Below, in pieces: positions 1-24,450 of a stretch of 25,674 bases of DNA; the stretch's first letter is position 1; every line of letters starts with the position of its first letter. The translations under genes and the position numbers were made by a program. Origin of the DNA: Octopus sinensis. Lineage: Eukaryota. The notes under the pieces were generated by a model. The model was not told the origin of the DNA. It saw nothing but the letters and a program-made list of their open reading frames with translations, and did no database searches. The stretch covers positions 1-25,674 of the forward strand of contig NW_021836011.1 in the NCBI RefSeq assembly GCF_006345805.1, read 5' to 3'.

Positions 1-77
1 TTTAAATATAAACTCAGTGAACGCGATACTTTTCGGTTGATGGAACAACTGAATCCTCGTGGTCGAAAGACGGAGAT

Positions 78-135
78 CCACCACCACTACCACCACCACC
101 ACCACCATCACCACCACCACCACCACCATCATCAT
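78..135. repeat. (CAC)n/(CAT)n trinucleotide microsatellite
   Basis: Directly visible; it explains the poly-His and poly-Gly ORFs at 14-252. Confidence 0.95.
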
Positions 136-449
136 AAACACTTATTGTGTTACAGTTCATGTAAAATGTATTACGGGTACACATATACGGGTGCAGCTTC
201 ATCTGCTCTAGCTTACATGTTGCTTCATGTTACATGTGTACTATTTATATGATAGCAGTCGTCTGCGTTTAGGGCCAACTGCTCTTCGCGCTAGCAAAAC
301 GCTTCCTTTGTTTTCGTTGGGGATGGCACGGCGCCTGAGCAAAACCAAAAGATAAAGAAATATTGTATGAGATACCCTGTGCGATAAATGTGTGTGTTGG
401 CCTTATATATGTTGTAGCTAAGAAAATAACAATAGGTAAGATTCAAGAA

Positions 450-1037
450 GGCGGCGAGCTGGCAGAAACGTTAGCACGCTGGGCGAAATGCTTAGAGGTA
501 TTTCGTCTGTCGTTACGTTCTGAGTTCAAATTCCGCCGAGTTCGACTTTGCCTTTCATCCTTTCAGGGTTGATTAATTAAGCACCAGTTACGCACTGGAG
601 TCGATGTAATCGACTTAATCCGTCTGTCTGTCTGTTCTTGTTTGTCCTCTCTGTGTTTAGCCCCTTGTGGGTAGTAAAGAAATAGGTATTTCGTCTGCCG
701 CTACGTTCTGAGTTCAATTTCCGCCGAGGTCGACTTTGCCTTTTATCCTTTCGGGGTCGATTAATTAAGTACCGGTTACGCACTGGGGTCGATATAATCG
801 ACTTAATCCATCTGTCTGTCCTTGTTTGTCCCCTCTGTGTTTAGCCCCTTGTGGGTAGTAAAGAAATAGGTATTTCGTCTGCCGCTACGTTCTGAGTTCA
901 AATTCCGCCGAAGTCGACTTTGTCTTTCAGTCTTTCGGGGTCGATAAATTAAGTACCAGTTACGTACTGAGGTCGATCTAATCGACTGGCCCCCTCCTTC
1001 AAAATTTCGGGTCTTTTGCCTAAAGTAGAAAAGAATA
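450..1037 (+). mobile_element. tRNA-derived SINE family S2, tandem trimer (head + tail-A unit, tail-A unit, tail-B unit)
   Basis: A-box-like TGGCAGAAACG and B-box-like GAGTTCAAATTCC. Units restart at GGTATTTCG at 497, 685 and 869. Flanked by AATA(G/A)GTAAGATTCAAG at 431-447 and 1034-1050 (TSD, 16/17 identical). Confidence 0.9.
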
Positions 1038-1098
1038 AGTAAGATTCAAGCCTAAAATCGGGGTCGTTTAATTCACAGTTCTGGGTGTGTGTGTGTGT

Positions 1099-3488: not shown

Positions 3489-3869
3489 TCTCTTATTTTA
3501 CTTTGTCATTTGACTGCGGCCATGTTGGAGCACCACCTTTAGTCGAACGAATCGACCCCAGGGCTTATTCTTTGTAAGCCTAGTACTTATTCTAACGGTT
3601 TATTTTACCGAACCGCTAGGTTACGGGGACGTAAACACACCAACATCGGTTGTCAAGCAATGGTGGGGTACAACCACAGACACATAATACACACACACAC
3701 GCACACACATGACGGACGTCTTTCAGTTTCCGTCTACCAAATCCACTCACAAGGCTTTGGTCGGCCCGAGGCTATAGTAGAAGACACTTGCCCAGAGTGC
3801 CACGCCGTGAGACTGAACCCAGAACCATGTAGTTGGGAAACAGGCTTCTTACCACACAACCACGCCTAT
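3489..3869 (-). mobile_element. SINE S1, near full length
   Basis: Head-to-tail reverse-complement match to 21052-21447. Confidence 0.93.
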
Positions 3870-3970
3870 ATTATCGGAACTGGGAACAACAAACGGCAGC
3901 TCCGGCCTTTGGAACGGAGTATTCTTTGTTAGAAATGGAAGTATCTTTGAATACTATAACTGCATCTTCA

Positions 3971-4180
3971 GGCGACGAGCTGGCAGAATCGTTAGCATGC
4001 CGGACAAAGTGCATAGCAACATTTCATCCGTCTTTCTGAGTTCAAATTCCGCTGAGGTCGACCTTGCCGTTCTTAATTTTGGGGTCGATAAAATAAGTAC
4101 TACTAGAGTACAGGGGTCGATGTGATCGACTGACCCCAGCCCCGAAAATTTCAGGCCTTCTGCCTACAGTGGAAAGGATC
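3971..4180 (+). mobile_element. SINE S2 monomer, tail B
   Basis: GGCGACGAGCTGGCAGAA head, GAGTTCAAATTCC B box, tail ...GGCCTTCTGCCTACAGTGGAAAGGAT. Confidence 0.88.
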
Positions 4181-4412
4181 TTATACCTTCGCTTTTGTGG
4201 GTTTTCTTTTGCAGTGAATTCTTAAGTCACGCGGTTGGAAACGAAGCATTTTATGGAGTTCTTGAGTCTATCTTTAAGGAGGCTTTTCTGGCTTTGGTGA
4301 AAGTACTTGCTATCTTTCTGTCAATGCGCTATGAAACAACTTTTGGGGTTGCCTCTAACCTGGATCCTGAAAATCTTGATATATCAAACTCTCACGTGAT
4401 TCTGAGAACTTT

Positions 4413-5259: not shown

Positions 5260-6450
5260 TACCTATCAACATAACTGCCTACCTACACACCAACCTATTT
5301 ATTACCTACATACCTACCAACTTACCTACCTACATTCATACATATCGTCTTATCTACTTACATAGCTACTTATCTACCTACCTATTCACGTCGCTCGCTC
5401 TCTTCCTCTCTCTCTCTCTCTCTCCATATACAACCACAATCATACATGTATACATACTCATATAGACACATAAGTATGCACATCCCTACATTCATAGACA
5501 CACAAATATTTTATACACACATAAATACATAATTGCATACGTCATACACACGTATTTGCAAACACACACGTATATGCAAACATACGCGTATATGCAACAC
5601 ACGTATATGCACACACACACACACACGCATATATGCAGATACACACACACGCGTATATACAGACAGGCATACGCTTATATACACACACACACACACACAT
5701 GCATATATACAAACACGCGTATATACAAACACACGCGTATATACACATACACGCGCATGCCTATATATACACACACAACACATGTATGCCTATATAATAT
5801 ATATACACACATACACGCATACATACATACTTGCCCACATACATACACACCTGCATATATATATATATATACGCATATGTAAGTCTCATACATATGCACA
5901 CTCGTATATCTTTCATACATAAACACACTCATACATAAACACATACAAACACACATTCATAAACGCACGCACACATACAAACACACGTGCACATACATAA
6001 ACACACACAGAAACGCGCGCACACAGAAACACGTGCACACATACACGCACACACACATACACGCTCACACACATACACGCTCACACACATACACGCTCAC
6101 ACACATACACGCTCGCACGCATACATAAACGCACGCATACATAAACGCACGCATACATAAACGCACGCATACATAAACGCACGCATACATAAACGCACGC
6201 ATACATAAACGCACGCATACATAAACGCACGCATACATAAACGCACGCATACATAAACGCACGCATACATAAACGCACACATACATAAACGCACACATAC
6301 ATAAACGCACACATACATAAACGCACACATACATGGAAACCCACACATACATAAACGCATATATACACAAACACTATATACACAAACACATACATAAACA
6401 CATATACATAAACTCACATACACAAACACACACACACAAACACACACATT
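5260..6450. repeat. Compound low-complexity tract: (TACC)n, (CT)n, (CA)n, (TA)n, CGCA/TACA variants
   Basis: Directly visible; source of the many HT/CV-rich ORFs. Confidence 0.95.
6045..6334. repeat. 16-bp minisatellite with ordered variants
   Basis: About 4 x ACGCTCACACACATAC, then 10 x GCACGCATACATAAAC (6115-6274), then about 4 x GCACACATACATAAAC. Confidence 0.92.
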
Positions 6451-6683
6451 CATACTTAAAACATGGCGACCGTAGTTGTCAGCTGAATATTCGGACGTGT
6501 GTAATTACTACGTCTATGAAAGCAACAGGCCATATAATGGCTGAGCTGCACAGAGAAAGTCGATGAGATTAAATAAGAGTGTTTTTCTATAGGAATCTTT
6601 ACATAACATATGCTGCGACTAACATTCGCACGTATACTACACAGACTCTCTCTCTCTCTCTCTCTCTATCTCCACGTATTGCT

Positions 6684-6924
6684 CGGGTGACTAAGTGTAC
6701 GAACATCCAGGTACATCTATACTATAAACGTTTGTAGAATTTGAAACAATATTAAAAAAAAGTATAGATCTCATGTTGGGAATAAGTTTAAATTAAATCG
6801 TGACTAAGATTTGATGGAACTTTTAAAGAATATCATCGTTTACTTAAAATTAAATATAAATTCACAAAGAGTAGAGGAGAATAAATCCATCATGGCTGAA
6901 GTGTGTCGTCTGCTTCATCCCAGT
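6684..6924 (+). repeat. 241-bp segment duplicated at 10637-10876
   Basis: Same-orientation copy, CGGGTGACTAAG...CATCCCAGT, with only a handful of differences. Confidence 0.95.
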
Positions 6925-8335: not shown

Positions 8336-8679
8336 TAGGGTATAAACGGCTGCATGTGTTGAGGGATGAATTTTACCAGCTTCATGGCTAAGGGTCGGGG
8401 ACGGATAGCAGACACAACGAACGAGTTGTCTGTATAATCTCTCCTGGAAGAACAGGGTCGGAAGGAACAAATTCTAATTTTGTGTTTGATTCTTCTAGTC
8501 CTCATTCCTTCCTAGGCATCCACAAGCCGTGAGTGTTTATACTCGGAGTTTTTTCTTGTTCTTGTGGCCTTCCAAGGCTTCTGAATCTAATCCATCCGCT
8601 CACCCAGTTATACTACGCGGTGGAGCTGTGGATACAATAAATGTTCTCCCTCCACACGCTGGATACTAGATTATGAAAT

Positions 8680-8981
8680 ATTTCTTTATTGCCCACTAGG
8701 GGCCGACAAAGATGGGGACAACACAGCCTGATTTGGGGTCAGCTGTTCGATATGTAATTACAATAAAAATGAAGTTAAAAATGAAAGCATATATAAACGA
8801 ATGGTTATACATTACAAAAGGACAATAGAAATGGAGCGGTGTTTGGGTTCAGCCCCGACCCCACGAGCCCCAGTTCTCCACTGGTACTTTCCTGACACTT
8901 TATAGCATATTCACGAGATTCCAATCACTCGAAACACTCGTGCTACACACTTCCATCTTTTCGTTGAACACCACCACCGCT
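8680..8981 (-). mobile_element. 5'-truncated L1/Tx1-like LINE 3' end (ORF2 tip plus 3' UTR)
   Basis: Perfect 14-bp TSD CTAGATTATGAAAT at 8666-8679 and 8982-8995. Minus strand encodes KRWKCVARVFRVIG, similar to ERWVNCARMSSING in the 24452 element. Ends CCCCTAGTGGGCAATAAAGAAAT. Confidence 0.8.
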
Positions 8982-9092
8982 CTAGATTATGAAATCTAAC
9001 ACAAATAATACATTCACAGCAAGAAACGTATTAAGCAGAAATTAGAAAAATTGTTTAAAAAAAAAAGTACAAAAAAAAAATGAACTAAACTA

Positions 9093-9266
9093 ATAGATGC
9101 AGGAGTGGCTGTGTGGTAAGTAGCTTGCTAACCAACCACATGGTTCCGGGTTCAGTCCCGCTGCGTGGCATCTTGGGCAAGTGTCTTCTGCTATAGCCTC
9201 GGGCCGACCAAAGCCTTGTGAGTGGATTTGGCAAACGGAAACTGAAAGAAGCCTGTCGTATATATG

Positions 9267-9297
<31 letters not shown>

Positions 9298-9508
9298 TTG
9301 TGTATGTATGTTTGTCCCCCTAGCATTGCTTGACAACCGATGCTGGTGTGTTTACGTCCCTGTCACTTAGCGGTTCGGCAAAAAGAGACCGATAGAATAA
9401 GTACTGGGCTTACAAAGAATAAGTCCCGGGGTCGATTTGCTCGATTAAAGGCGGTGCTCCAGCATGGCCGCAGTCAAATGACTGAAACAAGTAAAAGAGT
9501 AAAGAGTA
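9093..9508 (+). mobile_element. SINE S1, full length, near consensus
   Basis: A-box-like TGGCTGTGTGG, B-box-like GGTTCAGTCCC, internal (TA)n(TG)n, tail ...AAGTAAAAGAGTAAAGAGTA. Confidence 0.95.
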
Positions 9509-9718
9509 AACTACTTGAACGGAAACGAGGATTTGCAGCTAAAACTAAAAGCTTAAACTATACAGTGTGGTCCAAAAGTCACACGCAAAATAAGTTCAGT
9601 ACGCTCCGAAATTGTCGAAGACATGCTTCAGTTTTTTCAGAATTGAATAAAATAATGAAATAATGATGAATACACACGTACTTGTACATAACAAAATAAA
9701 ATAAATAATAGAAAACAT

Positions 9719-10139: not shown

Positions 10140-12786
10140 GTCGAATTGGCCGTTTGCCAGAGACTCTGAATCAATGCAGCATAGCTTGAACGTAAAGAAA
10201 TCAATCTCTGTTAAGACTCTCTATTAGCAGAACAAGTTCCAAAATGGAAAAAAAAAAAATCATGTTTAATAAGCAAATTCTATGAAGAGGAGAACCAAAG
10301 TAGAACAAGGCAACCACAAATATGCTGAACAAAAAGCAATCGGAAATTAAAGGCACAAAAGTGAAAACACTTCTAAAGAAAATGACAAATAGAATGTCTT
10401 CAGACATTCTTGAAGATATTGCTTCAAAGATCTCGACTTTTAGCGCCGAGATTTGAAAACATAGAATGGGAAGAGCGTTATGGGGACAACACAGCCTGAT
10501 TTGGGGCCAGCTGTTCGATATGTAATTACAATAAAAATGAAGTTAAAAATGAAAGCATATATAAACGAATGGTTATACATTACAGAAGGACAATAGAAAT
10601 GGAGCGGTGTTTGGGTTCAGCCCTGACCCAAACATACGGGTGACTAAGTGTACGAACATCCAGGTACATCTATACTATAAATGTTTGTAGAATTTGAAAC
10701 AATGTTAAAAAAAATATACATCTCATGTTGGGAATAAGTTTAAATTAAATCGTGACTAAGATTTGATGGAACTTTTAAAGAATATCATCGTTTACTTGAA
10801 ATTAAATATAAATTCACAAAGAGTAGAGGAGAAAAATCCATCATGGCTGAAAGTGTGTCGTCTGCTTCATCCCAGTTAGACGTTTTCAGATGTTTGCCAA
10901 CTGCCATTACGGTTTTCATTCATAAAAAACCCCCAGCCAAACCACCGAAATGAAAACGTATCGCTTGATAGCCAGAACATCAATGTATAAGATATACGCT
11001 GAGGTGCTGTTGTTCTTACACGATTATTGTAGCACCGATAGTACTATAATACTCGAACAGTCTGGGGGGAAAAAGAAAGAAGTATGGGGTTATAGAGCAG
11101 AGCCATTATTAACCAAAAAAAAAAGAGCAGAGAACCGCAGGAACTTGGCAGTAATATAAGTTGGACTACCAGAAAGTCTTTGAGAGAATGCCAAATGGGT
11201 GGATTATCAAATTATTATAATCAGCCAAAGTTCCACAACCACTGGTAATTGTTATTCAACAACTAAACATGATTTGGTACCGGACCCGACATTTTTACGT
11301 GTCAGAAATAACAGACAAATCAAATCTAACGTGATACGTTATCAATGAGGCATCCTGCAGGGCGATGGTTAGTCAGTATTGCTCTTTGCCCTCGTTAAGT
11401 TTTATCATCATACTTACTCACACAACATAATGCTTACAGAAATAGATACCGTGAATCTAGGAACATTTCTCACCATTGTAGCAGACCTGGAGCTGATACA
11501 GTATTAACAGCAGAAAACAATTGGATTTTATTATCCAATATTGTTCAGGCACTGCGAGGAAATTTTGCGAGTTTGTATGTGCATTACGATGGTAAGACAG
11601 TGAAAACTTGTGCACTCCTACCCACGACCCCCGTCCAAACTAAACCTGAACAGTTTGTAAATACAGTCGTTAATTTCAAGTGAAAACTAAAACCCACTTC
11701 GGCAGGATGTGAATGTTAGGTAGGGGTGGTGGTGGCAAGAAATGAGTATCTTCTGCGAGTAAAAGAAAATATGGTGATTAGAACTGTCAGTTTGTAACAG
11801 ATGACAATCATAATGGCCGCAAAACCTTTGAAGTGCTTGTCCGGACTCCTAACTTTGGTCTTTCCTAGATTAATTACGACGAAAACGTAGCGAGATGGTT
11901 GTAAAATCTCAGGAGCCTCTGTGGTACTTTAAACTTCCATATCAATGGAGGACGTAGACGTTATATTTCCCACGCAGATAGAAATGCTTGTAGCCTTAAA
12001 TTTGTATTAACATTATAGCAGATGCTGATTGGAACATTAAAGCAACAACAGAAAAAACAAAAACAAAACGAAGGGAAATAAAAACCGTCAAAGCAAACAA
12101 ACAGAAAATTAGGCATGTATTTTGCTCAAATTTACGAGCACAAACATAGAAATATCGTTAGGATAGCTAACTAACTTGAGAAGCGCCATGAAATAAAAGC
12201 TGACACGGATTTCTCCCCAAGGAATAGGGGAAAAATCCTATTTAACACCAAATGAAAATACAGACAACAAGAGCATTTCATTGAGAAGGTTGTAGACGGA
12301 GTGTTTGAAACGTAAAACACAGGCCGTAAATTGAATAAACCACACTAAAAGCCTGGAATGGAAAAACTGACAAGTTTATAACATCTCACTCCTGAAAGTT
12401 ACCGCCATGCAGTGTAGCGGCGGGAAGGAACTCCCCATCACGTAACTTCTGCACAAATGCCAGAAATTATCAATTGACAGCAAGAACCACATCATTGCTA
12501 ACTGCAAGAAAAATGTTCTTAAGATGCTGGATAAGGCATGACAGAGAGAAGGAAGAATAATAGGAAATTCGTGCGGAAGGTGAAAAAAAAAATGATAGGA
12601 ATTGAGTGAATATAACCTGAAAATAGTAACCGAATTCAAACACAAGCAACTTTATATTGGGTCTAAGTGAGAATACGTTCTGCTCTGGATGTCAGCTGCC
12701 CACAGTGGTAAGAATAAACAGAAGGATGACATCTAAGGACCGATTATGAGCAGTATGCAAAATCGGTATCCAAAATACACTTTCAC
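10140..12786 (+). pseudogene. Heavily decayed R4/Dong-like (RLE-type) non-LTR retrotransposon ORF: RT, CCHC-like finger, restriction-like endonuclease
   Basis: Motifs in the expected order across frameshifts: TYRLIA..MYKI..EQSGGKK.VWG (10950-11159), LDYQKVFERMPNGWIIK (11161-11211), GILQGD (11349-11366), EYLLRVK (11744-11764), HIIANC (12488-12505), RHD (12534-12542), LDVSCP (12685-12702), RYPKYTF (to 12784). The 5' boundary is approximate. Confidence 0.8.
10480..10876 (+). other. Composite insertion: copy of 8712-8861, short linker, copy of 6684-6924
   Basis: 10480-10629 matches 8712-8861 with about 3 mismatches; linker 10630-10636; 10637-10876 matches 6684-6924. It interrupts the R4-like ORF. 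Confidence 0.92.
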
Positions 12787-13353: not shown

Positions 13354-13656
13354 TGGCACCTTACAGTTCTTATCGAAGAATTATCTAGAAGAACTGTCTG
13401 TTGTCAATCCTTTGTTGGGAAGAATCGGTGACAGACCAACAAAGGTGAAAACCAGTTTATCAGAGAACTAAACACTGAGAAAAAAAAATGGAAGAACTGA
13501 ACATCATGGAAGGCGATTGGAACAAACAACCCCACCCTAAAACATTGCTGTCCTCTCGTCGATTACCAATGATGTCCAAGGTGGAAAGAAAAACGCGTAA
13601 GACTTACACAACACTGCAAGGATGAAGATCGCCTTCGATAGCGAAGAATAACCATT

Positions 13657-14111
<455 letters not shown>

Positions 14112-14900: not shown

Positions 14901-15111
14901 GTTCGAAAGTTTCTTTAAGCTTCCGTTTAGCAGTCAAGAGAAGAAGCTCCGAACTCTTCAAAGATAAAATAACTTTCCTACAGACAAAATTTATGTATCA
15001 GAAATGTAATCAGTTTACTCCTCTTACCTGTGGTATACCTGCCAATTTACTCCTGTGACTTGGGCTATACTGGCTACTTGTAAAGCTATTCCTATAACTA
15101 TTAACAATAAT

Positions 15112-15541
15112 AGCTTCAAATTTAGGCACAAGGCCAGCAATTTCGGGGCTAGGGTAAGTCGATTACATCGACCCCAGTGTTCAACTGGTACTTATTTTAT
15201 TGACCCCTAAGGGATGAAAGGCAAAATCGACCTCGGCGTAGATTGAATTCAGAACGTAAAGACGAACAAAATGTCGCTAATCATTTTTGCTCGTCGTGCT
15301 AACGTTTCTTATTTCTTTATTGCCCACAAGGGGCTAAACATAGAGGGGACAAACAAGGACAGACGAAGGGATTAAGTCGATTACAGCGACCCCAGTGTGT
15401 AACTGAAACTTAATTTTTCGACCCCGAAAGGATGAAAAGCAAAGTCGACCTCGGCGGAATTTGAACTCAGAACGTAACGGCAGACGAAATACTGCTAAGC
15501 ATTTCGCCCGGCGTGCTAACGTTTCTGCCAGTTCACCTCCT
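15112..15541 (-). mobile_element. SINE S2 dimer: head + tail-A unit, then a head-truncated tail-B unit
   Basis: Junction at 15310/15309 (...AAAGAAATA|AGAAACGTTAG...). Flanking direct repeat TAACTATTAA(C/T)A(A/G)TAAT at 15095-15111 and 15542-15558 (15/17 identical). Confidence 0.88.
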
Positions 15542-16789
15542 TAACTATTAATAGTAATGGTTTCATTTGAACATTCAAAAGACTTGATTTTTTTTTTCTA
15601 CTATTCTTAGAATCTAATGACAGTCAAATTATGGCTCACGTGCTACACGCGGATCTCGAAGCTTCCCAGCGTGATATTGAATTCCAGTGCTATTTTTCTA
15701 AAACAGTACACTCTAGAGATAGAGGAACATAGCTACACCCCCCCCCCACACACACGTGTGTGTGGATAGGTATTTGTACGTGTGTGTGTGTATATATATA
15801 TTTATTCACACGCACACACATATTGTATATATATATATATATATGTATGTATATGTATATATGCACATACAATTATATGGATGTAGTGTGTGTGTATAGC
15901 CATGCACGTTTGTATGTAGACTGCAGCTTTAGAATATATATATATATATTATATATATATATATTAAAAAAAAAATCTCATCTATGCTATGGCTTCTTAT
16001 CAAACATCATGGCCACCCCTGATACAAACCAAGCTGAATGAATGGATATTAGTGTATTGCAGATGCTTATTGCATTATTCAGCTTACATAATAGGCTTGA
16101 TTCACATATCAATAACGTTTGATTATGAACTGATAGGGAGCCTAACTGTTACGTGAGTTCATATTCGGAAGCAGATGTGTTATATCTGTGTCACTGTTAT
16201 CATTTTGAATGTAAGCTTTCTATAGTATTATTTATGAGGAAAAGTAGCACGAAGCTTCTCCCGGTGAGAGACGAACTTAGTATTAAGAGATTCAAAGATT
16301 TTTTTAGCTTGTAGGCAATACCTAACACTTTTGTATTTCTCTCCCGTTCGGCCTTCTTCAGTCTGTCTCTGGACACCACACACACACACACACACACACG
16401 CATACACCAACGCACAAAAAACACACAGACGCTCTTACTCACTCACTCACGTAAACACATACATACATACATACATATAGACAGTGGCGGCTCGTACATA
16501 AAAATCAGTGGGGGTTCTGCTTCAGAAAACGTTTTGCTGTTGTTTTAATATTGTGTAAAAGGAAACAAAGATATAAAAAGAATATTTATACATAAACTTG
16601 ATCAGTTCGCGTTTTAGCCACTGCCGAGTAGTGTGTTGAATTTGTTCACAGAAAACCGCCGCGAAATCCCCCTTGTTTTTCAACCCGCCCAATGACAAAA
16701 TAAGGGTGGAAAATCTGCCCTATTTTTCAAATCCTGGCAGCAACACTAAAGCTGGAAGTAAGATAATAATCTAATTCTACATTTTATTA

Positions 16790-17345: not shown

Positions 17346-18061
17346 TCAGAAATTTACGTTGCTAAAGTTAATACTAAAGCCTATTATATATATATGCGTG
17401 AGTGTGTGTAGATCTTTATGTATATGATATATACTTCTATGCATGAGTATGTGAGTGTGTTGCATAAGTATAAGTATGTATGTTCTCTGTGTTAGGTGTG
17501 TGTGTGTGTGTGTGAAAGATGCACACACAACAGTATGCAAATAGTGTGCGCTGCATTATGTCTATAGTGCATGTATGTATATATATTGCGTCTGTAATAT
17601 AAATCCCTCATTTATTCCTTATTCTTTGTGATCTTCAAAGAGATCAGGGCTCCAGAAATCTGATTCCAGTGATTTGTAATTAGCAGCTACTGACATACGG
17701 AATATTCCTCTAACGGAAACTCTAAACACCGCGCAAAGATAACACATGGCTTCACATGTAACGAGAAACTCTATAATGAGACCTCCTCGCAATAAAAGGA
17801 AAAAAACAAACAAACCAAACAAACAAACAAACAAACCAAAACCAAAAATGCAAGACAAAAGCATGAAAAACAATTCTGGATGCATGTGCGTGCATGTAGC
17901 ATCACTACCCCCCCCCCTGAACGAGCTATGTTTAGCTCACCTCTTCCTTTCCCCCTTTTCCTCCTCTTTCTGCTCCTCTCCTCCTTCTCTTCCCCTCTCT
18001 TTTCCTTCTCCCTTTTCTTGTCCACCCTCCTGTTCCTCCCCCCAGTCTCTCTTCTTCTGCT

Positions 18062-18375
18062 CTTCCCTCTCGCATCACCTCATCTTCCCTCTCGACTCTC
18101 CTCGTCTTCCCTCTCGCCTCTCCTCGTCTTCCCTCTCGCCTCTCCTCATCTTCCCTCTCGCCTCTCCTCATCTTCCCTCTCGCCTCTCCTCATCTTCCCT
18201 CTCGCTTCTCGTCTTCCCCTCTCGCCTCTCCTCATCTTCCCTCTCGCCTCTCCTCATCTTCCCTCTCGCCTCTCCTCATCTTCCCTCTCGCCTCTCCTCG
18301 TCTTCCCTCTCGCCTCTCCTCGTCTTCCCTCTCGCCTCTCCTCGTCTTCCCTCTCGCCTCTCCTCATCTTCCCCC
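18062..18375. repeat. 22-bp minisatellite CTTCCCTCTCGCCTCTCCTC(A/G)T, about 14 copies
   Basis: Directly visible; explains the ORFs starting at 17746 and 17880 and the minus-strand ORFs. Confidence 0.93.
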
Positions 18376-18440
18376 TCTCTACTGCCGTCGTCAGCGTTAT
18401 TACTGAGATAAGCACAAATGTGCTTTGCCATGAATATCTT

Positions 18441-19184: not shown

Positions 19185-19390
19185 TGGCATGGCTGTGTGC
19201 TTAAGCAGCTAACTTTTGCAACCACGTGGCTTTGGGTTCAGTCCTACTGCGTGGTAACTCGGGAAAAGTGTCTTCTACTGTATAGCCCCTGGCCGACCAA
19301 TGCCTCTTGAGTACATTTGGGAGACAAAAACTGAGTGAAAGCCTATCTAGCTATCTAGCTATCTACCTATCTAGCTATCTACCTATCTAC

Positions 19391-19428
<38 letters not shown>

Positions 19429-20130
19429 CGTTTTTTTCCCTCTTCCCCCTTTTTTCCTCTTCCCCTTTTTTCCTCTTTTTTTCTTTTTTCATTTCTCTTT
19501 TCTTTTGTTCCTTTTTTCTTTTTTTTTGTTTTATTTTTTGTTCTTTTTTTTTCCCTTTTACGATCCCTTTTGATCGAAAACCTACGCCACCTTTTTTTTG
19601 TTTCTTTTGTTTTTTGTTTTTTTCATCCCCCAAAAGAAAAGCTCTACCTTGTAACTTGTCCCATCTGTGTGGCCAATAAAGAAACTTATCTACCTACCTA
19701 TCTATCTACCTATCTATCTACCTATCTATCTACCTACCTATCTATCTACCTATCTATCTACCTATCTATCTACCTACCTATCTATCTACCTACCTATCTA
19801 CCTATCTACCTATCTACCTATCTATCTATCTATCTATCTATCAACATTTCTATTTATCTATCCAGTCTATGCATGTATGTATATATCTCTCTCTCTATCT
19901 ATCAACATGTCTGTCTGTCTTAACTATATACCTGTGCTTTTGTGTTTGTCACTCACCACCACTTAACAACCGGTATTGGTTTGTTTGTGTCTCAGTCGTA
20001 GCGGTTCGACAAGACGGACCCATAGAATAAACTGTAAACTTGAAAAAGAAAAAAGCACTAGGACCATGTTCTGCCAACAATGTACGAGTGCTTGTGCCTG
20101 GCTGTTGTTCATCTATTTTAAGCAGGTCCT
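19185..20130 (+). mobile_element. Old SINE S1 split by an expanded (TATC/TACC)n tract and a nested insertion
   Basis: Head and central segment at about 19185-19345; tail from about 19920 (CTTAACAACCGGTATTGG...). 3' boundary approximate. Confidence 0.75.
19430..19684 (+). mobile_element. Probable L1/Tx1-like LINE 3' UTR fragment inside (TATC)n
   Basis: T-rich body, CCTTGTAAC motif and terminal TGTGGCCAATAAAGAAA, similar to the ends at 8680 and 24976. (TATC)-type repeat on both sides. Confidence 0.55.
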
Positions 20131-20171
20131 CATCTTCCACAACAGAAGGTCTCCCTGACTTTTTGTCTTCG

Positions 20172-20300
20172 ATGCTCTGAGTTCAAATTCTGCAGAGGTC
20201 GACTTTGCCTTTAATCCTTTCGGGGTCGATGGAATAAGTACCAGTCGAGGATTGGGAGTCGATGTAATCAACTTACCCCTCCCTACCAATTTCAGGCATA
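20172..20300 (+). mobile_element. SINE S2, 5'-truncated
   Basis: CTCTGAGTTCAAATTC...GGTCGACTTTGCC...TCGATGTAATC matches the S2 body. Confidence 0.85.
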
Positions 20301-21051: not shown

Positions 21052-21447
21052 AGGCGCAGGAGTGGCTGTGTGGTAAGTAGCTTGTTTACCAACCACATGG
21101 TTCCGGGTTCAGTCCCACTGCGTGGCACCTTGGGCAAGTGTCTTCTACTATAGCCTTGGGCCGACCAAAGCCTTGTGAGTGGATTTGGTAGACGGAAACT
21201 GAAAGAAGCCCGTCGTATATATGTATGTGTGTGTGTTTGTATGTCTGTGTTTGTCCCCCTAGCATTGCTTGACAACCGATGCTGGTGTGTTTATGTCCCC
21301 GTCACTTAGCGGTTCGGCAAAAAAGAGACCGATAGAATAAGTACTGGGCTTACAAAGAATAAGTCCGGGGTCGAGTTGCTCGACTAAAGGCGGTGCTCCA
21401 GCATGGCCGCAGTCAAATGACTGAAACAAGTAAAAGAGTAAAGAGTA
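21052..21447 (+). mobile_element. SINE S1, full length, near consensus
   Basis: AGGCGCAGGAGTGGCTGTGTGG head through ...AAAAGAGTAAAGAGTA tail. Confidence 0.95.
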
Positions 21448-21834
21448 TACTTTGAAGCAGAAACTGACATGAATACCGTTTGTTCGAGTTTGTTACAAAT
21501 GTTCACATTGTTTTATGCGAAGACTTCTGCGCATTTCTCTCTCTCCCTCTCCCTCTCTCTGTCTCTCTCCAAATTCTTAACGATGTACGAGCATTTGTGT
21601 TCTGTTAGCCGAGGTCTTTCCTGGCATTTTGCAATTTAGTAATCTGTTAAAATAATAAACAAACAACAATATATAAACAAATAACTTGCTTTATCACAGG
21701 ATCTGCTCAAACCCAGCAGAGTTTGCGGACTACAAGTCAAATATATGTCTAAATATTGTAGACGGCAAGTAGTAATCGTGTGTCTGTTTGCGTGTATACA
21801 TACATATATATGTGCACATATTATTTGTGTGTGT

Positions 21835-23990: not shown

Positions 23991-24210
23991 GACAGCAAAC
24001 TGGCAGAAACGTTAGCACGCCGGGCGAAATGCTTAGCAGTATTTCGTCTGTCTTTACGCTCTGAGTTCAAATTCCGCCCAGGTCGACTTTGCCTTTCATC
24101 CTTTTGGGGTCGATAAATTAAGTACCGCTTGAATACTGGGGATCGATGTAACTGACTATCTCCCGTCCCCAAATTTCTGGCCTTGTACCTAGAGTTGAAA
24201 AGATTACTAT
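23991..24210 (+). mobile_element. SINE S2 monomer, tail B
   Basis: CTGGCAGAAACGTTAGC head, B box, tail GGCCTTGTACCTAGAGTTGAAAAGATT. Confidence 0.9.
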
Positions 24211-24212
24211 TT

Positions 24213-24450
24213 AGGCGGCCAGGTGGAAGAAACCTTAAGTGCGTTGGACGAAGTGCTTAACGGCATTTCGTTTCCTCACGTTCTAAGCTCAAATTCCGCT
24301 GAGGTCGACTCTGCCTTTCCTCCTTTCGGAGTCGATAAAATAAATACCAGTTAAGCACTGGGGTCAATTTAATCGACTTATCCCCTGTCCCAAAATTGCT
24401 GCCCTTGTGGCAGAATTTGAAACCATTATTATTATTATTATTATTATTAT
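24213..24450 (+). mobile_element. SINE S2 monomer, diverged, with (ATT)n tail
   Basis: GGCGGCCAGGTGG head, CAAATTCCGCTGAGGTCGAC body, TTTGAAACC(ATT)n end. Confidence 0.85.

What the first reader, a model, noticed from the sequence alone, without database searches (positions are those of the whole stretch)
450..1050. Tail-A SINE units occur only nested inside other S2 SINEs (possible self-targeting or template jumping)
Seen: all three tail-A units in the window are immediately followed by a head-truncated S2 unit. The junctions are AAAGAAATA|GGTATTTCG (684/685 and 868/869) and AAAGAAATA|AGAAACGTT (15310/15309, minus strand). One outer TSD flanks each whole array, while tail-B copies (3971, 23991, 24213) stand alone. 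At 15112-15541 the extreme head (GGAGGTGAACTGGC) and the tail-B unit look diverged, whereas the tail-A unit is near consensus, suggesting later insertion into an older copy. Established: several Tx1-clade LINEs are target-specific, including for tRNA or snRNA sequences. Inference: tail-A RNAs are inserted preferentially into the tRNA-derived head of their own family, or are concatenated by RT template jumping. Only two loci support this.
Basis: partly seen in the sequence, partly recalled or inferred. Interest (0 to 1): 0.72.

Follow-up and report, generated by a model that had tools for sequence, protein, structure and literature searches.

The report
Octopus SINE copies stacked head-to-tail
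Two compound repeats in this octopus-like DNA are short mobile elements (SINEs) stacked head-to-tail, most likely because a younger copy landed inside an older relative. Related octopus DNA shows the same element standing alone, so this is ordinary transposon behaviour, not a self-targeting system.

Summary
The sequence facts hold. Three tail-A S2 units (448-684, 685-868, 15541-15310 minus strand) each abut a head-truncated S2 unit at the stated junctions. One outer target-site duplication (TSD) flanks each array.

Two supporting claims fail:
- Tail-B copies 23991 and 24213 do not stand alone. They are a head-to-tail pair 7 bp apart.
- A fourth tail-A-like 3' end (8680-8981, minus strand) sits in unique DNA with its own 14-bp TSD.

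"Only nested" is refuted. In about 146 kb fetched from Octopus vulgaris and O. bimaculoides, none of four tail-A S2 units is followed by S2. One is a full-length solo insertion with its own 11-bp TSD.

Head-to-tail stacking is general for S2: 11 same-orientation neighbour pairs, 0 opposite, about 1.4 expected. Tail-B copies home to (ATT)n.

Best reading (about 0.5):
- Ordinary target-primed insertion of the younger tail-A subfamily into older tail-B copies at AGA-type nick sites.
- The shared head guides second-strand priming in register, which hides the inner TSD.
- At 450-1038 a 184-bp unit was then duplicated locally; 69 nt spanning both junctions are identical.

The main rival is template switching by the reverse transcriptase (about 0.3).

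Known kind of event; low interest.

The parts
436..447 (+). 5' copy of the outer target-site duplication (TSD) of array 1, GTAAGATTCAAG
   Evidence: The exact 12-mer occurs only at 436 and 1039.
448..684 (+). Array 1, unit 1: full-length S2 SINE with tail A (leader AAGGCGGCGAGCTGG ... GTAAAGAAATA)
   Evidence: It is 7.1% from the tail-A consensus.
685..868 (+). Array 1, unit 2: S2 unit that starts at GGTATTTCG (head-truncated) and carries tail A
   Evidence: TRF gives period 184. Its first 33 nt are identical to unit 3. Its last 36 nt are identical to unit 1, including the private GGGTAG variant.
869..1038 (+). Array 1, unit 3: S2 unit with the same truncated start, and a tail B of the 'By' type (...GCCTAAAGTAGAAAAGAATAA)
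   Evidence: Its 3' body and tail carry the diagnostic bases shared with L004 1891 and L004 13578.
1039..1050 (+). 3' copy of the outer TSD of array 1
15542..15551 (-). 5' copy of the outer TSD of array 2, TTAATAGTTA
15310..15541 (-). Array 2, unit A: full-length S2 with tail A
   Evidence: It is 6.6% from the tail-A consensus.
15105..15309 (-). Array 2, unit B: older S2 unit of the B2 tail type.
   Evidence: It is 15.4% from the B2 consensus. Its first 15 nt are identical to the homologous 15 nt of unit A, which is the longest match run in that alignment.
15095..15104 (-). 3' copy of the outer TSD of array 2
23991..24425 (+). Two full-length tail-B S2 units head-to-tail (23991-24205 and 24213-24425), 7 bp apart, with (ATT)n on the flanks
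3970..4185 (+). Solitary tail-B S2 copy
20164..20300 (+). Solitary 5'-truncated tail-B S2 copy
8666..8995 (-). A 302-bp non-S2 insertion (8680-8981) that ends in a tail-A-like 3' end. It is flanked by the perfect 14-bp TSD ATTTCATAATCTAG at 8666-8679 and 8982-8995.

Best explanation
S2 is an abundant octopus SINE. It has a tRNA-like head and a conserved body. Its 3' tail comes in two forms, a (ATT)n-terminated tail B or tail A.

Tail A is tail B's relative with a 26-nt insert. It ends ...GTAAAGAAATA. It marks a younger S2 subfamily that retrotransposes on its own.

Proposed sequence of events at both window loci (inferred):
1. A tail-A RNA was reverse-transcribed from a nick inside the head of an older, same-orientation tail-B S2 copy. 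This is ordinary target-primed reverse transcription at an A/AG-starting site.
2. The new cDNA is homologous to the resident head. The upstream DNA end therefore annealed in register to prime second-strand synthesis.
3. As a result the inner TSD is hidden inside the shared head, the downstream (resident) unit looks head-truncated, and only the resident copy's outer TSD is visible.
4. At 450-1038 the resulting A-B dimer later gained one more 184-bp unit, by unequal crossover or slippage between the homologous bodies.

There is no family-specific self-targeting. The association with S2 reflects a short nick-site preference plus the density and clustering of SINEs.

Shown: the structures, the solo copies, the divergence difference and the duplicated junction.
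Inferred: the in-register resolution and the order of events.
For: 1. Tail A works alone. L001 13692-13919 is full-length and has its own 11-bp TSD inside an S1 SINE whose two halves are both present. L002 3814 and L006 20130 abut non-SINE DNA.
2. The 3' flanks of independent tail-A ends start AGAAAC (L001), AGAAAT (L006), AGACGC (L004), AATATT (L002) and AGAAAC (window array 2). The array-2 junction is therefore a typical tail-A target site.
3. Array 2 shows an age difference: unit A is 6.6% from its consensus and unit B is 15.4%.
4. In array 2 the 15 nt after the junction (AGAAACGTTAGCACG) are identical in both units. This is the longest match run in an alignment that is 80% identical overall, as expected of a hidden TSD.
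5. Array 1 has identical junctions. A 69-nt stretch spanning both junctions is identical (649-717 = 833-901), although the units differ by about 9-12% overall. The GGGTAG tail variant is private to units 1 and 2 among 7 tail-A ends. Unit 2 matches unit 3 at its 5' end and unit 1 at its 3' end.
6. Stacking is general for S2. There are 11 same-orientation neighbour pairs against 0 opposite, with 1.4 expected; 0 of 5000 permutations reach 11. Of about 23 genuine S2 5' ends, 13 lie just downstream of ATT repeats, against a 3.3% background.
7. The terminal 39 nt of tail A are homologous to tail B: score 31 against 14.9 +/- 3.5, with 0 of 2000 shuffles as high.
Against: - A nested insertion between homologous SINEs and a one-step template-switch chimera give the same final sequence. 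Neither can be proven from two loci.
- The array-1 junction (ATA|GGTATTTCG) matches the AG-type flank only if the last A belongs to the target.
- The 15-nt identical run lies in the conserved A-box region, so by itself it is weak (p about 0.04).
- The subfamily consensuses rest on only 5-9 copies, partly from other species.
- Chimeras that are not nested insertions exist in related DNA. In L004, S2-A is joined to S1 from nt 24 with no S1 head upstream. In L005, S2 nt 1-158 is joined to S1 from nt 24 with no S2 remainder downstream.
- The species of the window is not known.
Confidence: 0.5

Rival explanations
1. One-step chimera by template switching. The LINE reverse transcriptase starts on a tail-B S2 RNA at the target, which creates the outer TSD. 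It stops inside the head and jumps to the 3' end of a tail-A S2 RNA. Array 1 would need two such jumps, or one jump plus a duplication. The whole array is then integrated at once.
For: - A single outer TSD flanks each array, the upstream unit has a complete 3' end, and the downstream unit has a truncated 5' end.
- Non-nested SINE-SINE chimeras occur in related DNA: L004 12826-13162 and L005 18722-19249.
- The 302-bp insertion at 8680-8981 joins a tail-A-like end to unrelated sequence at an 8-nt overlap, inside one TSD.
- Template jumps by LINE reverse transcriptases are documented (PMC2104539, PMC4476161). They are the usual explanation for the exchange of SINE modules in molluscs (PMC4758252).
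Against: - It does not explain why the array-2 breakpoint is followed by AGAAAC, the flank seen at independent tail-A insertions.
- It predicts equally aged units, but unit B of array 2 is about twice as diverged as unit A.
- Two independent jumps at the same nucleotide in array 1 are unlikely. The 69-nt identity and the private tail variant point to duplication of one junction.
Confidence: 0.3
2. Composite master element. Dimeric or trimeric S2 (A-unit plus B-unit) is itself a SINE subfamily that is transcribed from the first head and retrotransposed as a whole through tail B.
For: Each array has one TSD and a functional tail B at its 3' end. Dimeric SINE families are well known (PMC4758252 introduction; PMC13023118).
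Against: The two arrays have different junctions (GGTATTTCG against AGAAACG) and different tail-B types. Neither junction recurs in 146 kb of related octopus DNA that holds 4 tail-A and about 30 other S2 units.
Confidence: 0.07
3. Family-specific self-targeting. The tail-A partner LINE has a sequence-specific endonuclease aimed at the tRNA-like S2 head, like the Tx1-type or R2-type site-specific LINEs. Tail-A copies would therefore exist only inside S2.
For: Two of two tail-A loci in the window lie in an S2 head in the same orientation.
Against: None of 4 external tail-A units is in S2, and one has an ordinary TSD in S1. The two window junctions lie at different head positions. A tail-A-like end sits in unique DNA at 8680 with its own TSD.
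Confidence: 0.03
4. Purely DNA-level origin. Ectopic recombination or tandem duplication between neighbouring S2 copies built both arrays without any new retrotransposition.
For: The 184-bp periodicity, the duplicated junction of array 1 and a similar duplication of about 190 bp at L004 1090-1560.
Against: It cannot create the first junction between the tail-A 3' end and the head. The units carry different subfamily-diagnostic bases: A against By in array 1, A against B2 in array 2. The tail-A end is complete to its last base at every junction.
Confidence: 0.1

Closest known systems
SINE-into-SINE insertions and head-to-tail SINE clusters seeded by the elements' own 3' repeats. Examples are Alu copies landing in the A-rich tails of older Alus, and LINEs or SINEs that target microsatellites (reviewed in PMC3812793; Kojima and Fujiwara 2004, cited in PMC3747384).
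   Same: The pairs are in the same orientation and head-to-tail. New copies sit at the simple repeat that the family itself deposits; here (ATT)n lies upstream of 13 of about 23 S2 5' ends. A younger subfamily sits inside or next to an older one.
   Different: In the two tail-A arrays the insertion point is in the head of the resident copy, not in its tail. Homology between insert and target hides the inner TSD.
Chimeric retrocopies made by LINE reverse-transcriptase template switching. Examples are U6/L1 chimeras (PMC4476161), the tripartite Magnaporthe pseudogene (PMC2104539) and module exchange among mollusc SINEs (PMC4758252).
   Same: One TSD surrounds two or three fused RNA copies. The downstream part is 5'-truncated, and the upstream part is complete at its 3' end.
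   Different: Here both partners belong to the same SINE family, so a nested insertion gives an identical product. The age difference and the AGAAAC flank favour nesting at array 2.
Dimeric or composite SINE families (Alu, Twin, the shrew-mole dimer PMC13023118)
   Same: Two SINE monomers are fused in tandem, with one promoter-bearing head at the 5' end and one LINE-recognised tail at the 3' end.
   Different: A family needs the same junction in many dispersed copies. The two junctions here differ, and neither recurs in 146 kb.
Site-specific LINE/SINE systems (Tx1-type, R2, snRNA- or tRNA-targeting elements; R2 in PMC5035012)
   Same: The insertion lies within a multicopy sequence derived from a small RNA gene.
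   Different: There is no fixed target position. Most tail-A copies lie elsewhere.

Membership tests
tRNA-derived SINE with a LINE-type (stringent) 3' tail | Many dispersed copies with variable TSDs, intact 3' ends and variable 5' truncation | tested here: met
   44 S2 units lie in 171 kb. TSDs of 10-14 bp are seen. 5' starts are scattered from nt 17 to about nt 135, while the 3' ends are complete.
tRNA-derived SINE with a LINE-type (stringent) 3' tail | Head derived from a tRNA, with internal pol III A and B boxes | tested here: inconclusive
   A B-box-like GAGTTCAAATTCC and an A-box-like region are visible. ARAGORN and Rfam report no tRNA. The predicted fold is rod-like, with z = -1.3.
tRNA-derived SINE with a LINE-type (stringent) 3' tail | The 3' tail is shared with a partner LINE | not tested
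   No LINE open reading frame lies in the window or the loci. Only tail-A-like ends on non-S2 DNA were seen (window 8680; L001 17895).
CORE-SINE superfamily (octopus OR1/OR2 of Ohshima and Okada 1994, as cited in PMC4824008 and PMC4758252) | Central CORE domain homologous to that of MIR | tested here: inconclusive
S1 aligns significantly at CCTTGGGCAAGT (1 of 500 shuffles as good). S2 does not (100 of 500). No reference OR1/OR2 sequence was available.
Site-specific (self-targeting) retroelement | All or nearly all copies lie at one fixed position of one target sequence | tested here: not met
   The junctions lie at two different head positions. None of 4 external copies is in S2, and there is a solo copy with its own TSD.
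Composite (dimeric) SINE family | The same monomer-monomer junction recurs at many loci with different TSDs | tested here: not met
   Neither junction recurs in L001-L006. The sample is small (146 kb).
Template-switch chimeric retrocopy | One TSD around fused RNA copies, no TSD at the internal junction, and the internal junction at the exact 3' end of the upstream RNA | tested here: inconclusive
   The structure fits. Because the partners are homologous, an inner TSD of 13-15 nt could be hidden.
Local tandem duplication (unequal crossover or slippage) | Identical junctions, repeat units that share private variants, and a recombinant middle unit | tested here: met
   This applies to the second junction of array 1 only. 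The period is 184. 69 nt are identical across both junctions and the GGGTAG variant is private. Unit 2 matches unit 3 at its 5' end and unit 1 at its 3' end.

The most novel reading that the evidence does not exclude
Some octopus SINE multimers may be assembled at the RNA level.

Two observations prompt this:
- The array-1 junction falls on the first nucleotide of the 3' arm of a predicted 13-bp hairpin in the tRNA-like head, directly after its 4-nt loop.
- Two independent S2-S1 chimeras have the S1 partner cut at nt 24-29 of its tRNA-like head.

Cleaved SINE RNAs could be joined to the 3' end of another SINE RNA before integration. The joining could be an end-to-end template jump, or an RtcB-type RNA ligation as shown for U6/L1 (PMC6789731). 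In that case tRNA-processing enzymes would shape SINE architecture.
Probability: 0.1. Interest if true: 0.55.

Novelty: new member of a known kind. Interest (0 to 1): 0.22.

Why it matters
Mostly as a caution and an annotation aid. The arrays are real, but they are ordinary products of SINE biology: a younger subfamily nested in or fused to an older one, plus a local duplication. They are not evidence of a self-homing retroelement.

Useful by-products for annotating cephalopod repeats:
- Tail A is an independently mobile S2 subfamily, and its tail is a relative of tail B.
- Tail-B S2 copies home to (ATT)n, so they build same-orientation stacks.
- SINE-SINE chimeras are common in octopus DNA.

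If the RNA-level joining idea were true, it would link tRNA-processing enzymes to SINE evolution. The present data do not require it.

Tried and rejected
- Searching a minus-strand open frame that spans the tail-A/S2 junction as a 'protein' found no candidates.
- Exact DNA scans for the 25-nt tail-A end in viral and JGI metagenome contigs gave 0 hits.
- A full-text search for SINE sequence strings in papers gave 0 hits. The octopus genome papers found carry no SINE sequence detail.
- tRNA and Rfam scans of the window found nothing.
- No real coding exon lies in the window, so orthologous loci of the two arrays could not be fetched.
- I prepared a padded-exon query to retrieve the neighbouring genes of L001. 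I dropped it in favour of a composite query of SINE-derived peptides. That query gave five O. bimaculoides genes with DNA.
- Proteins known only from UniProt or metaclust are not on record for DNA look-up.
- The 'diverged extreme head' was rejected as evidence of age. It has 2-3 mismatches in 16 nt, and a solitary copy (23991) has more.
- The shared G in GGTATTT and the CTACG and GATTAA variants were rejected as array-private markers. They also occur in copies at other loci (L004, L006, L002).
- No TSD could be found for the composite at L004 12826-13162, or for L006 19947-20130.

Full report
WHAT IS THERE

The window is non-coding, repeat-rich DNA. It has no tRNA or Rfam hit and no credible open reading frame.

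A SINE-derived peptide from the window matches a 'hypothetical predicted protein' of Octopus vulgaris. The same repeats fill loci fetched from O. vulgaris and O. bimaculoides. The source is therefore an octopus or a close relative.

It has these parts:
- a leader AAGGYGGYGAGCTGGCAGAA;
- a tRNA-like head;
- a conserved body (...TTTCGGGGTCGATAAAWTAAGTACCAGT...GGGGTCGATGTAATCGACT);
- one of two tails.

Tail B ends ...GGCCTTGTGCCTAWAGTAGAAARGA followed by (ATT)n. Tail A carries an extra 26 nt (TAATCC.TCTGTCTGTCCTTGTTTGT) and ends ...TTTAGCCCCTTGTGGGYARTAAAGAAATA.

The last 39 nt of tail A are homologous to tail B. The alignment score is 31, against 14.9 +/- 3.5 for shuffles, and 0 of 2000 shuffles reach it. 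The two tails are therefore variants of one LINE-type tail, not unrelated modules.

CHECKING THE OBSERVATION

The coordinates and junctions are as stated.

Array 1 (+ strand):
- Unit 1 is 448-684: full head, tail A.
- Unit 2 is 685-868: starts at GGTATTTCG, tail A.
- Unit 3 is 869-1038: same start, tail B.
- TRF gives period 184, 2.6 copies, 90% matches.
- The TSD GTAAGATTCAAG lies at 436-447 and 1039-1050.

Array 2 (minus strand):
- Unit A is 15541-15310: full-length, tail A.
- Unit B is 15309-15105: starts at AGAAACGTT, tail B.
- The TSD TTAATAGTTA lies at 15542-15551 and 15095-15104.

Two parts of the observation are wrong:
- The tail-B copies at 23991 and 24213 do not stand alone. They are two full-length units in the same orientation, 7 bp apart.
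- There is a fourth tail-A-like 3' end at 8679-8702, minus strand. It terminates a 302-bp non-S2 insertion (8680-8981) bounded by a perfect 14-bp TSD, ATTTCATAATCTAG.

The 'diverged extreme head' of array 2 is only 2-3 mismatches in 16 nt against the family leader. That is no worse than in the solitary copy 23991.

TESTING 'ONLY NESTED' OUTSIDE THE WINDOW

No eukaryotic DNA collection can be searched directly, and DNA scans of the viral and metagenome collections found nothing.

I used SINE-derived peptides instead, to find annotated octopus proteins. I then fetched the DNA around their genes:
- L001: 20.3 kb of O. vulgaris OX597840.1.
- L002-L006: 150 kb of O. bimaculoides.

Together these give about 146 kb of non-N sequence. 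They were chosen without regard to tail A.

They contain four tail-A S2 units:
- L001 13692-13919 is full-length and has its own 11-bp TSD, AGAAACAGAAG (13679 and 13920). It is inserted in an S1 SINE whose two halves flank it.
- L002 3814-3930 is 5'-truncated and is followed by non-SINE DNA.
- L006 19947-20130 is 5'-truncated and is followed by AGAAATTGCATG..., which is non-SINE DNA.
- L004 12988-13162 is 5'-truncated and is followed directly by an S1 SINE that starts at its nt 24. No S1 head lies upstream.

None of the four is followed by S2. Tail A marks an independently mobile subfamily.

STACKING IS A GENERAL PROPERTY OF S2

Across the 171 kb held, there are 44 S2 units. S2 covers 4.1% of the sequence and S1 covers 11.3%.

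The S2 units form 11 neighbour pairs with a gap of at most 100 bp, all in the same orientation. No pair is in opposite orientation. Random placement gives 1.4 same-orientation pairs, and 0 of 5000 permutations reach 11.

Most of the pairs are tail-B units followed by a full-length unit.

Of about 23 genuine S2 5' ends, 13 have ATTATT-type repeats within 30 nt upstream. The background is 3.3%.

Tail-B S2 therefore lands in (ATT)n, the repeat that its own tail deposits. This accounts for same-orientation stacks. It is the familiar behaviour of elements whose 3' repeats match their targets (PMC3812793; PMC3747384 and references therein).

HOW THE TWO TAIL-A ARRAYS AROSE

Three facts bear on array 2:
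1. Independent tail-A ends are followed by AGAAAC (L001), AGAAAT (L006), AGACGC (L004) and AATATT (L002). The array-2 junction is followed by AGAAAC. The junction is therefore a typical tail-A target, and that is a property of nicking DNA.
2. Unit A is 6.6% from the tail-A consensus. Unit B is 15.4% from its B2 consensus.
3. The 15 nt after the junction are identical in both units. This is the longest match run in an alignment that is 80% identical overall, and it is followed by the most divergent stretch. A hidden TSD would look like this.

A full-length cDNA made at a nick in the head of a homologous, same-orientation SINE offers the upstream DNA end tens of nucleotides of homology. Second-strand priming in register is then the expected outcome. 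It yields exactly the observed structure: resident head, then new body and tail A, then the resident copy from the nick onward. This step is inferred, not shown.

For array 1:
- The two junctions are identical.
- A 69-nt stretch across both junctions (649-717 = 833-901) is identical, although the units differ by about 9-12%.
- The GGGTAG tail variant is private to units 1 and 2 among seven tail-A ends.
- Unit 2 matches unit 3 at its 5' informative sites, and matches unit 1 at its 3' sites and tail.
- Unit 3 carries bases diagnostic of a tail-B subfamily that is also seen at L004 1891 and L004 13578.

Array 1 is therefore best read as one A-into-B event followed by a 184-bp unequal crossover or slippage. 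A similar duplication of about 190 bp is visible at L004 1090-1560.

THE MAIN RIVAL

Template switching by the reverse transcriptase gives the same product when both partners are S2. It clearly happens in this genome:
- The L004 composite has no S1 head upstream.
- L005 18722-19249 joins S2 nt 1-158 to S1 from nt 24, with no S2 remainder downstream.
- The 8680-8981 insertion joins a tail-A-like end to other sequence at TTGTCCCC, inside one TSD.

Such jumps are documented for LINE reverse transcriptases (PMC2104539, PMC4476161) and are invoked for mollusc SINE evolution (PMC4758252).

I rank template switching second, at about 0.3. It does not explain the AGAAAC flank or the age difference at array 2.

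A composite master element is unlikely: the two junctions differ and neither recurs. A site-specific self-targeting system is contradicted.

COMPARISON WITH KNOWN SYSTEMS, AND NOVELTY

Nested SINE insertions, homing to the element's own tail repeat, template-switch chimeras and unequal-crossover expansion are all established. What is described here is a further instance of them, in an octopus SINE family.

I could not test whether S2 is the published OR1, OR2 or OK SINE.

One unexplained detail may be worth a look. The array-1 junction is the first base of the 3' arm of a predicted 13-bp hairpin in the head. In addition, the S1 partners of two chimeras are cut at nt 24-29. RNA-level joining of cleaved SINE RNAs, by an end-to-end jump or by RtcB-type ligation (PMC6789731), is not excluded. 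It is not needed either.

VERDICT

The feature is a known kind of event, and interest is low.

Noticed in passing
window 8666-8995 (minus strand); also 10480-10876 and 6684-6924: A 302-bp insertion (8680-8981) has a perfect 14-bp TSD and a tail-A-like last 42 nt. Its nt 121-270 are 98% identical to window 10480-10629. That homology stops at TTGTCCCCA, exactly where the similarity to tail A begins, so it looks like a chimeric retrocopy or a templated repair. Separately, 6684-6924 is 97% identical to 10637-10876. Neither module occurs in L001-L006.
   Followed up: partly
window 23991-24425; L001 10277-10710; L002 22347-22742; L004 1126-1504; L005 18490-18879, 24524-24829 and 35784-36125; L006 7795-8130: S2 SINEs sit in same-orientation head-to-tail pairs far more often than chance: 11 pairs against 1.4 expected, and none in opposite orientation. 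Of about 23 full-length S2 5' ends, 13 lie just downstream of (ATT)n. Tail-B S2 therefore homes to the microsatellite that its own tail creates.
   Followed up: yes
window 9103-9526, 21060-21464, 3505-3867, 13656-14109 and others: A second, more abundant SINE ('S1', 11% of the sampled DNA) is itself composite. It has a tRNA-like head with CCTTGGGCAAGT (CORE-like), an internal (TA)n(TG)n microsatellite of variable length, and a second half with a body resembling that of S2. Its 3' end, ...AAGTAAAAGAGTAA, resembles the ends of tail A and the By type of tail B. This suggests one shared LINE partner.
   Followed up: partly
L004 12826-13162 (minus strand) and L005 18722-19249: Two S2-S1 chimeras have the S1 part starting at nt 24-29 of its head. 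Neither shows the missing half of the interrupted element. These are not nested insertions; they are probably template-switch products.
   Followed up: partly
S2 consensus nt 33-62; window 497-509, 685-697 and 869-881: The S2 head is predicted to form a 13-bp hairpin: CGGGCGAAAUGCU, loop UAGC, GGUAUUUCGUCUG. The truncated units of array 1 begin at the first base of the 3' arm. The tail-A end GAAAUA is also complementary to UAUUUC of that arm, so the junction is a small palindrome. The fold as a whole is not better than shuffles (z = -1.3).
   Followed up: no
L004 1090-1560: An S2 tail-B copy is followed by a 5'-truncated copy that shares its private variants (CAGTGAAA). The motif ATAATATGTAAT (or a near copy) appears before, between and after the units. 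This is a local duplication of about 190 bp, analogous to the 184-bp repeat of array 1.
   Followed up: no
window 60-130, 5500-6460, 17940-18380 and 19340-19900: There are long simple-repeat tracts: (CCA)n, a 16-bp CATACATAAACGCACA array of about 34 copies, a 22-bp TCTTCCCTCTCGCCTCTCCTCA array of 14.5 copies, and (TATC)n with a 40-bp higher-order period.
   Followed up: no
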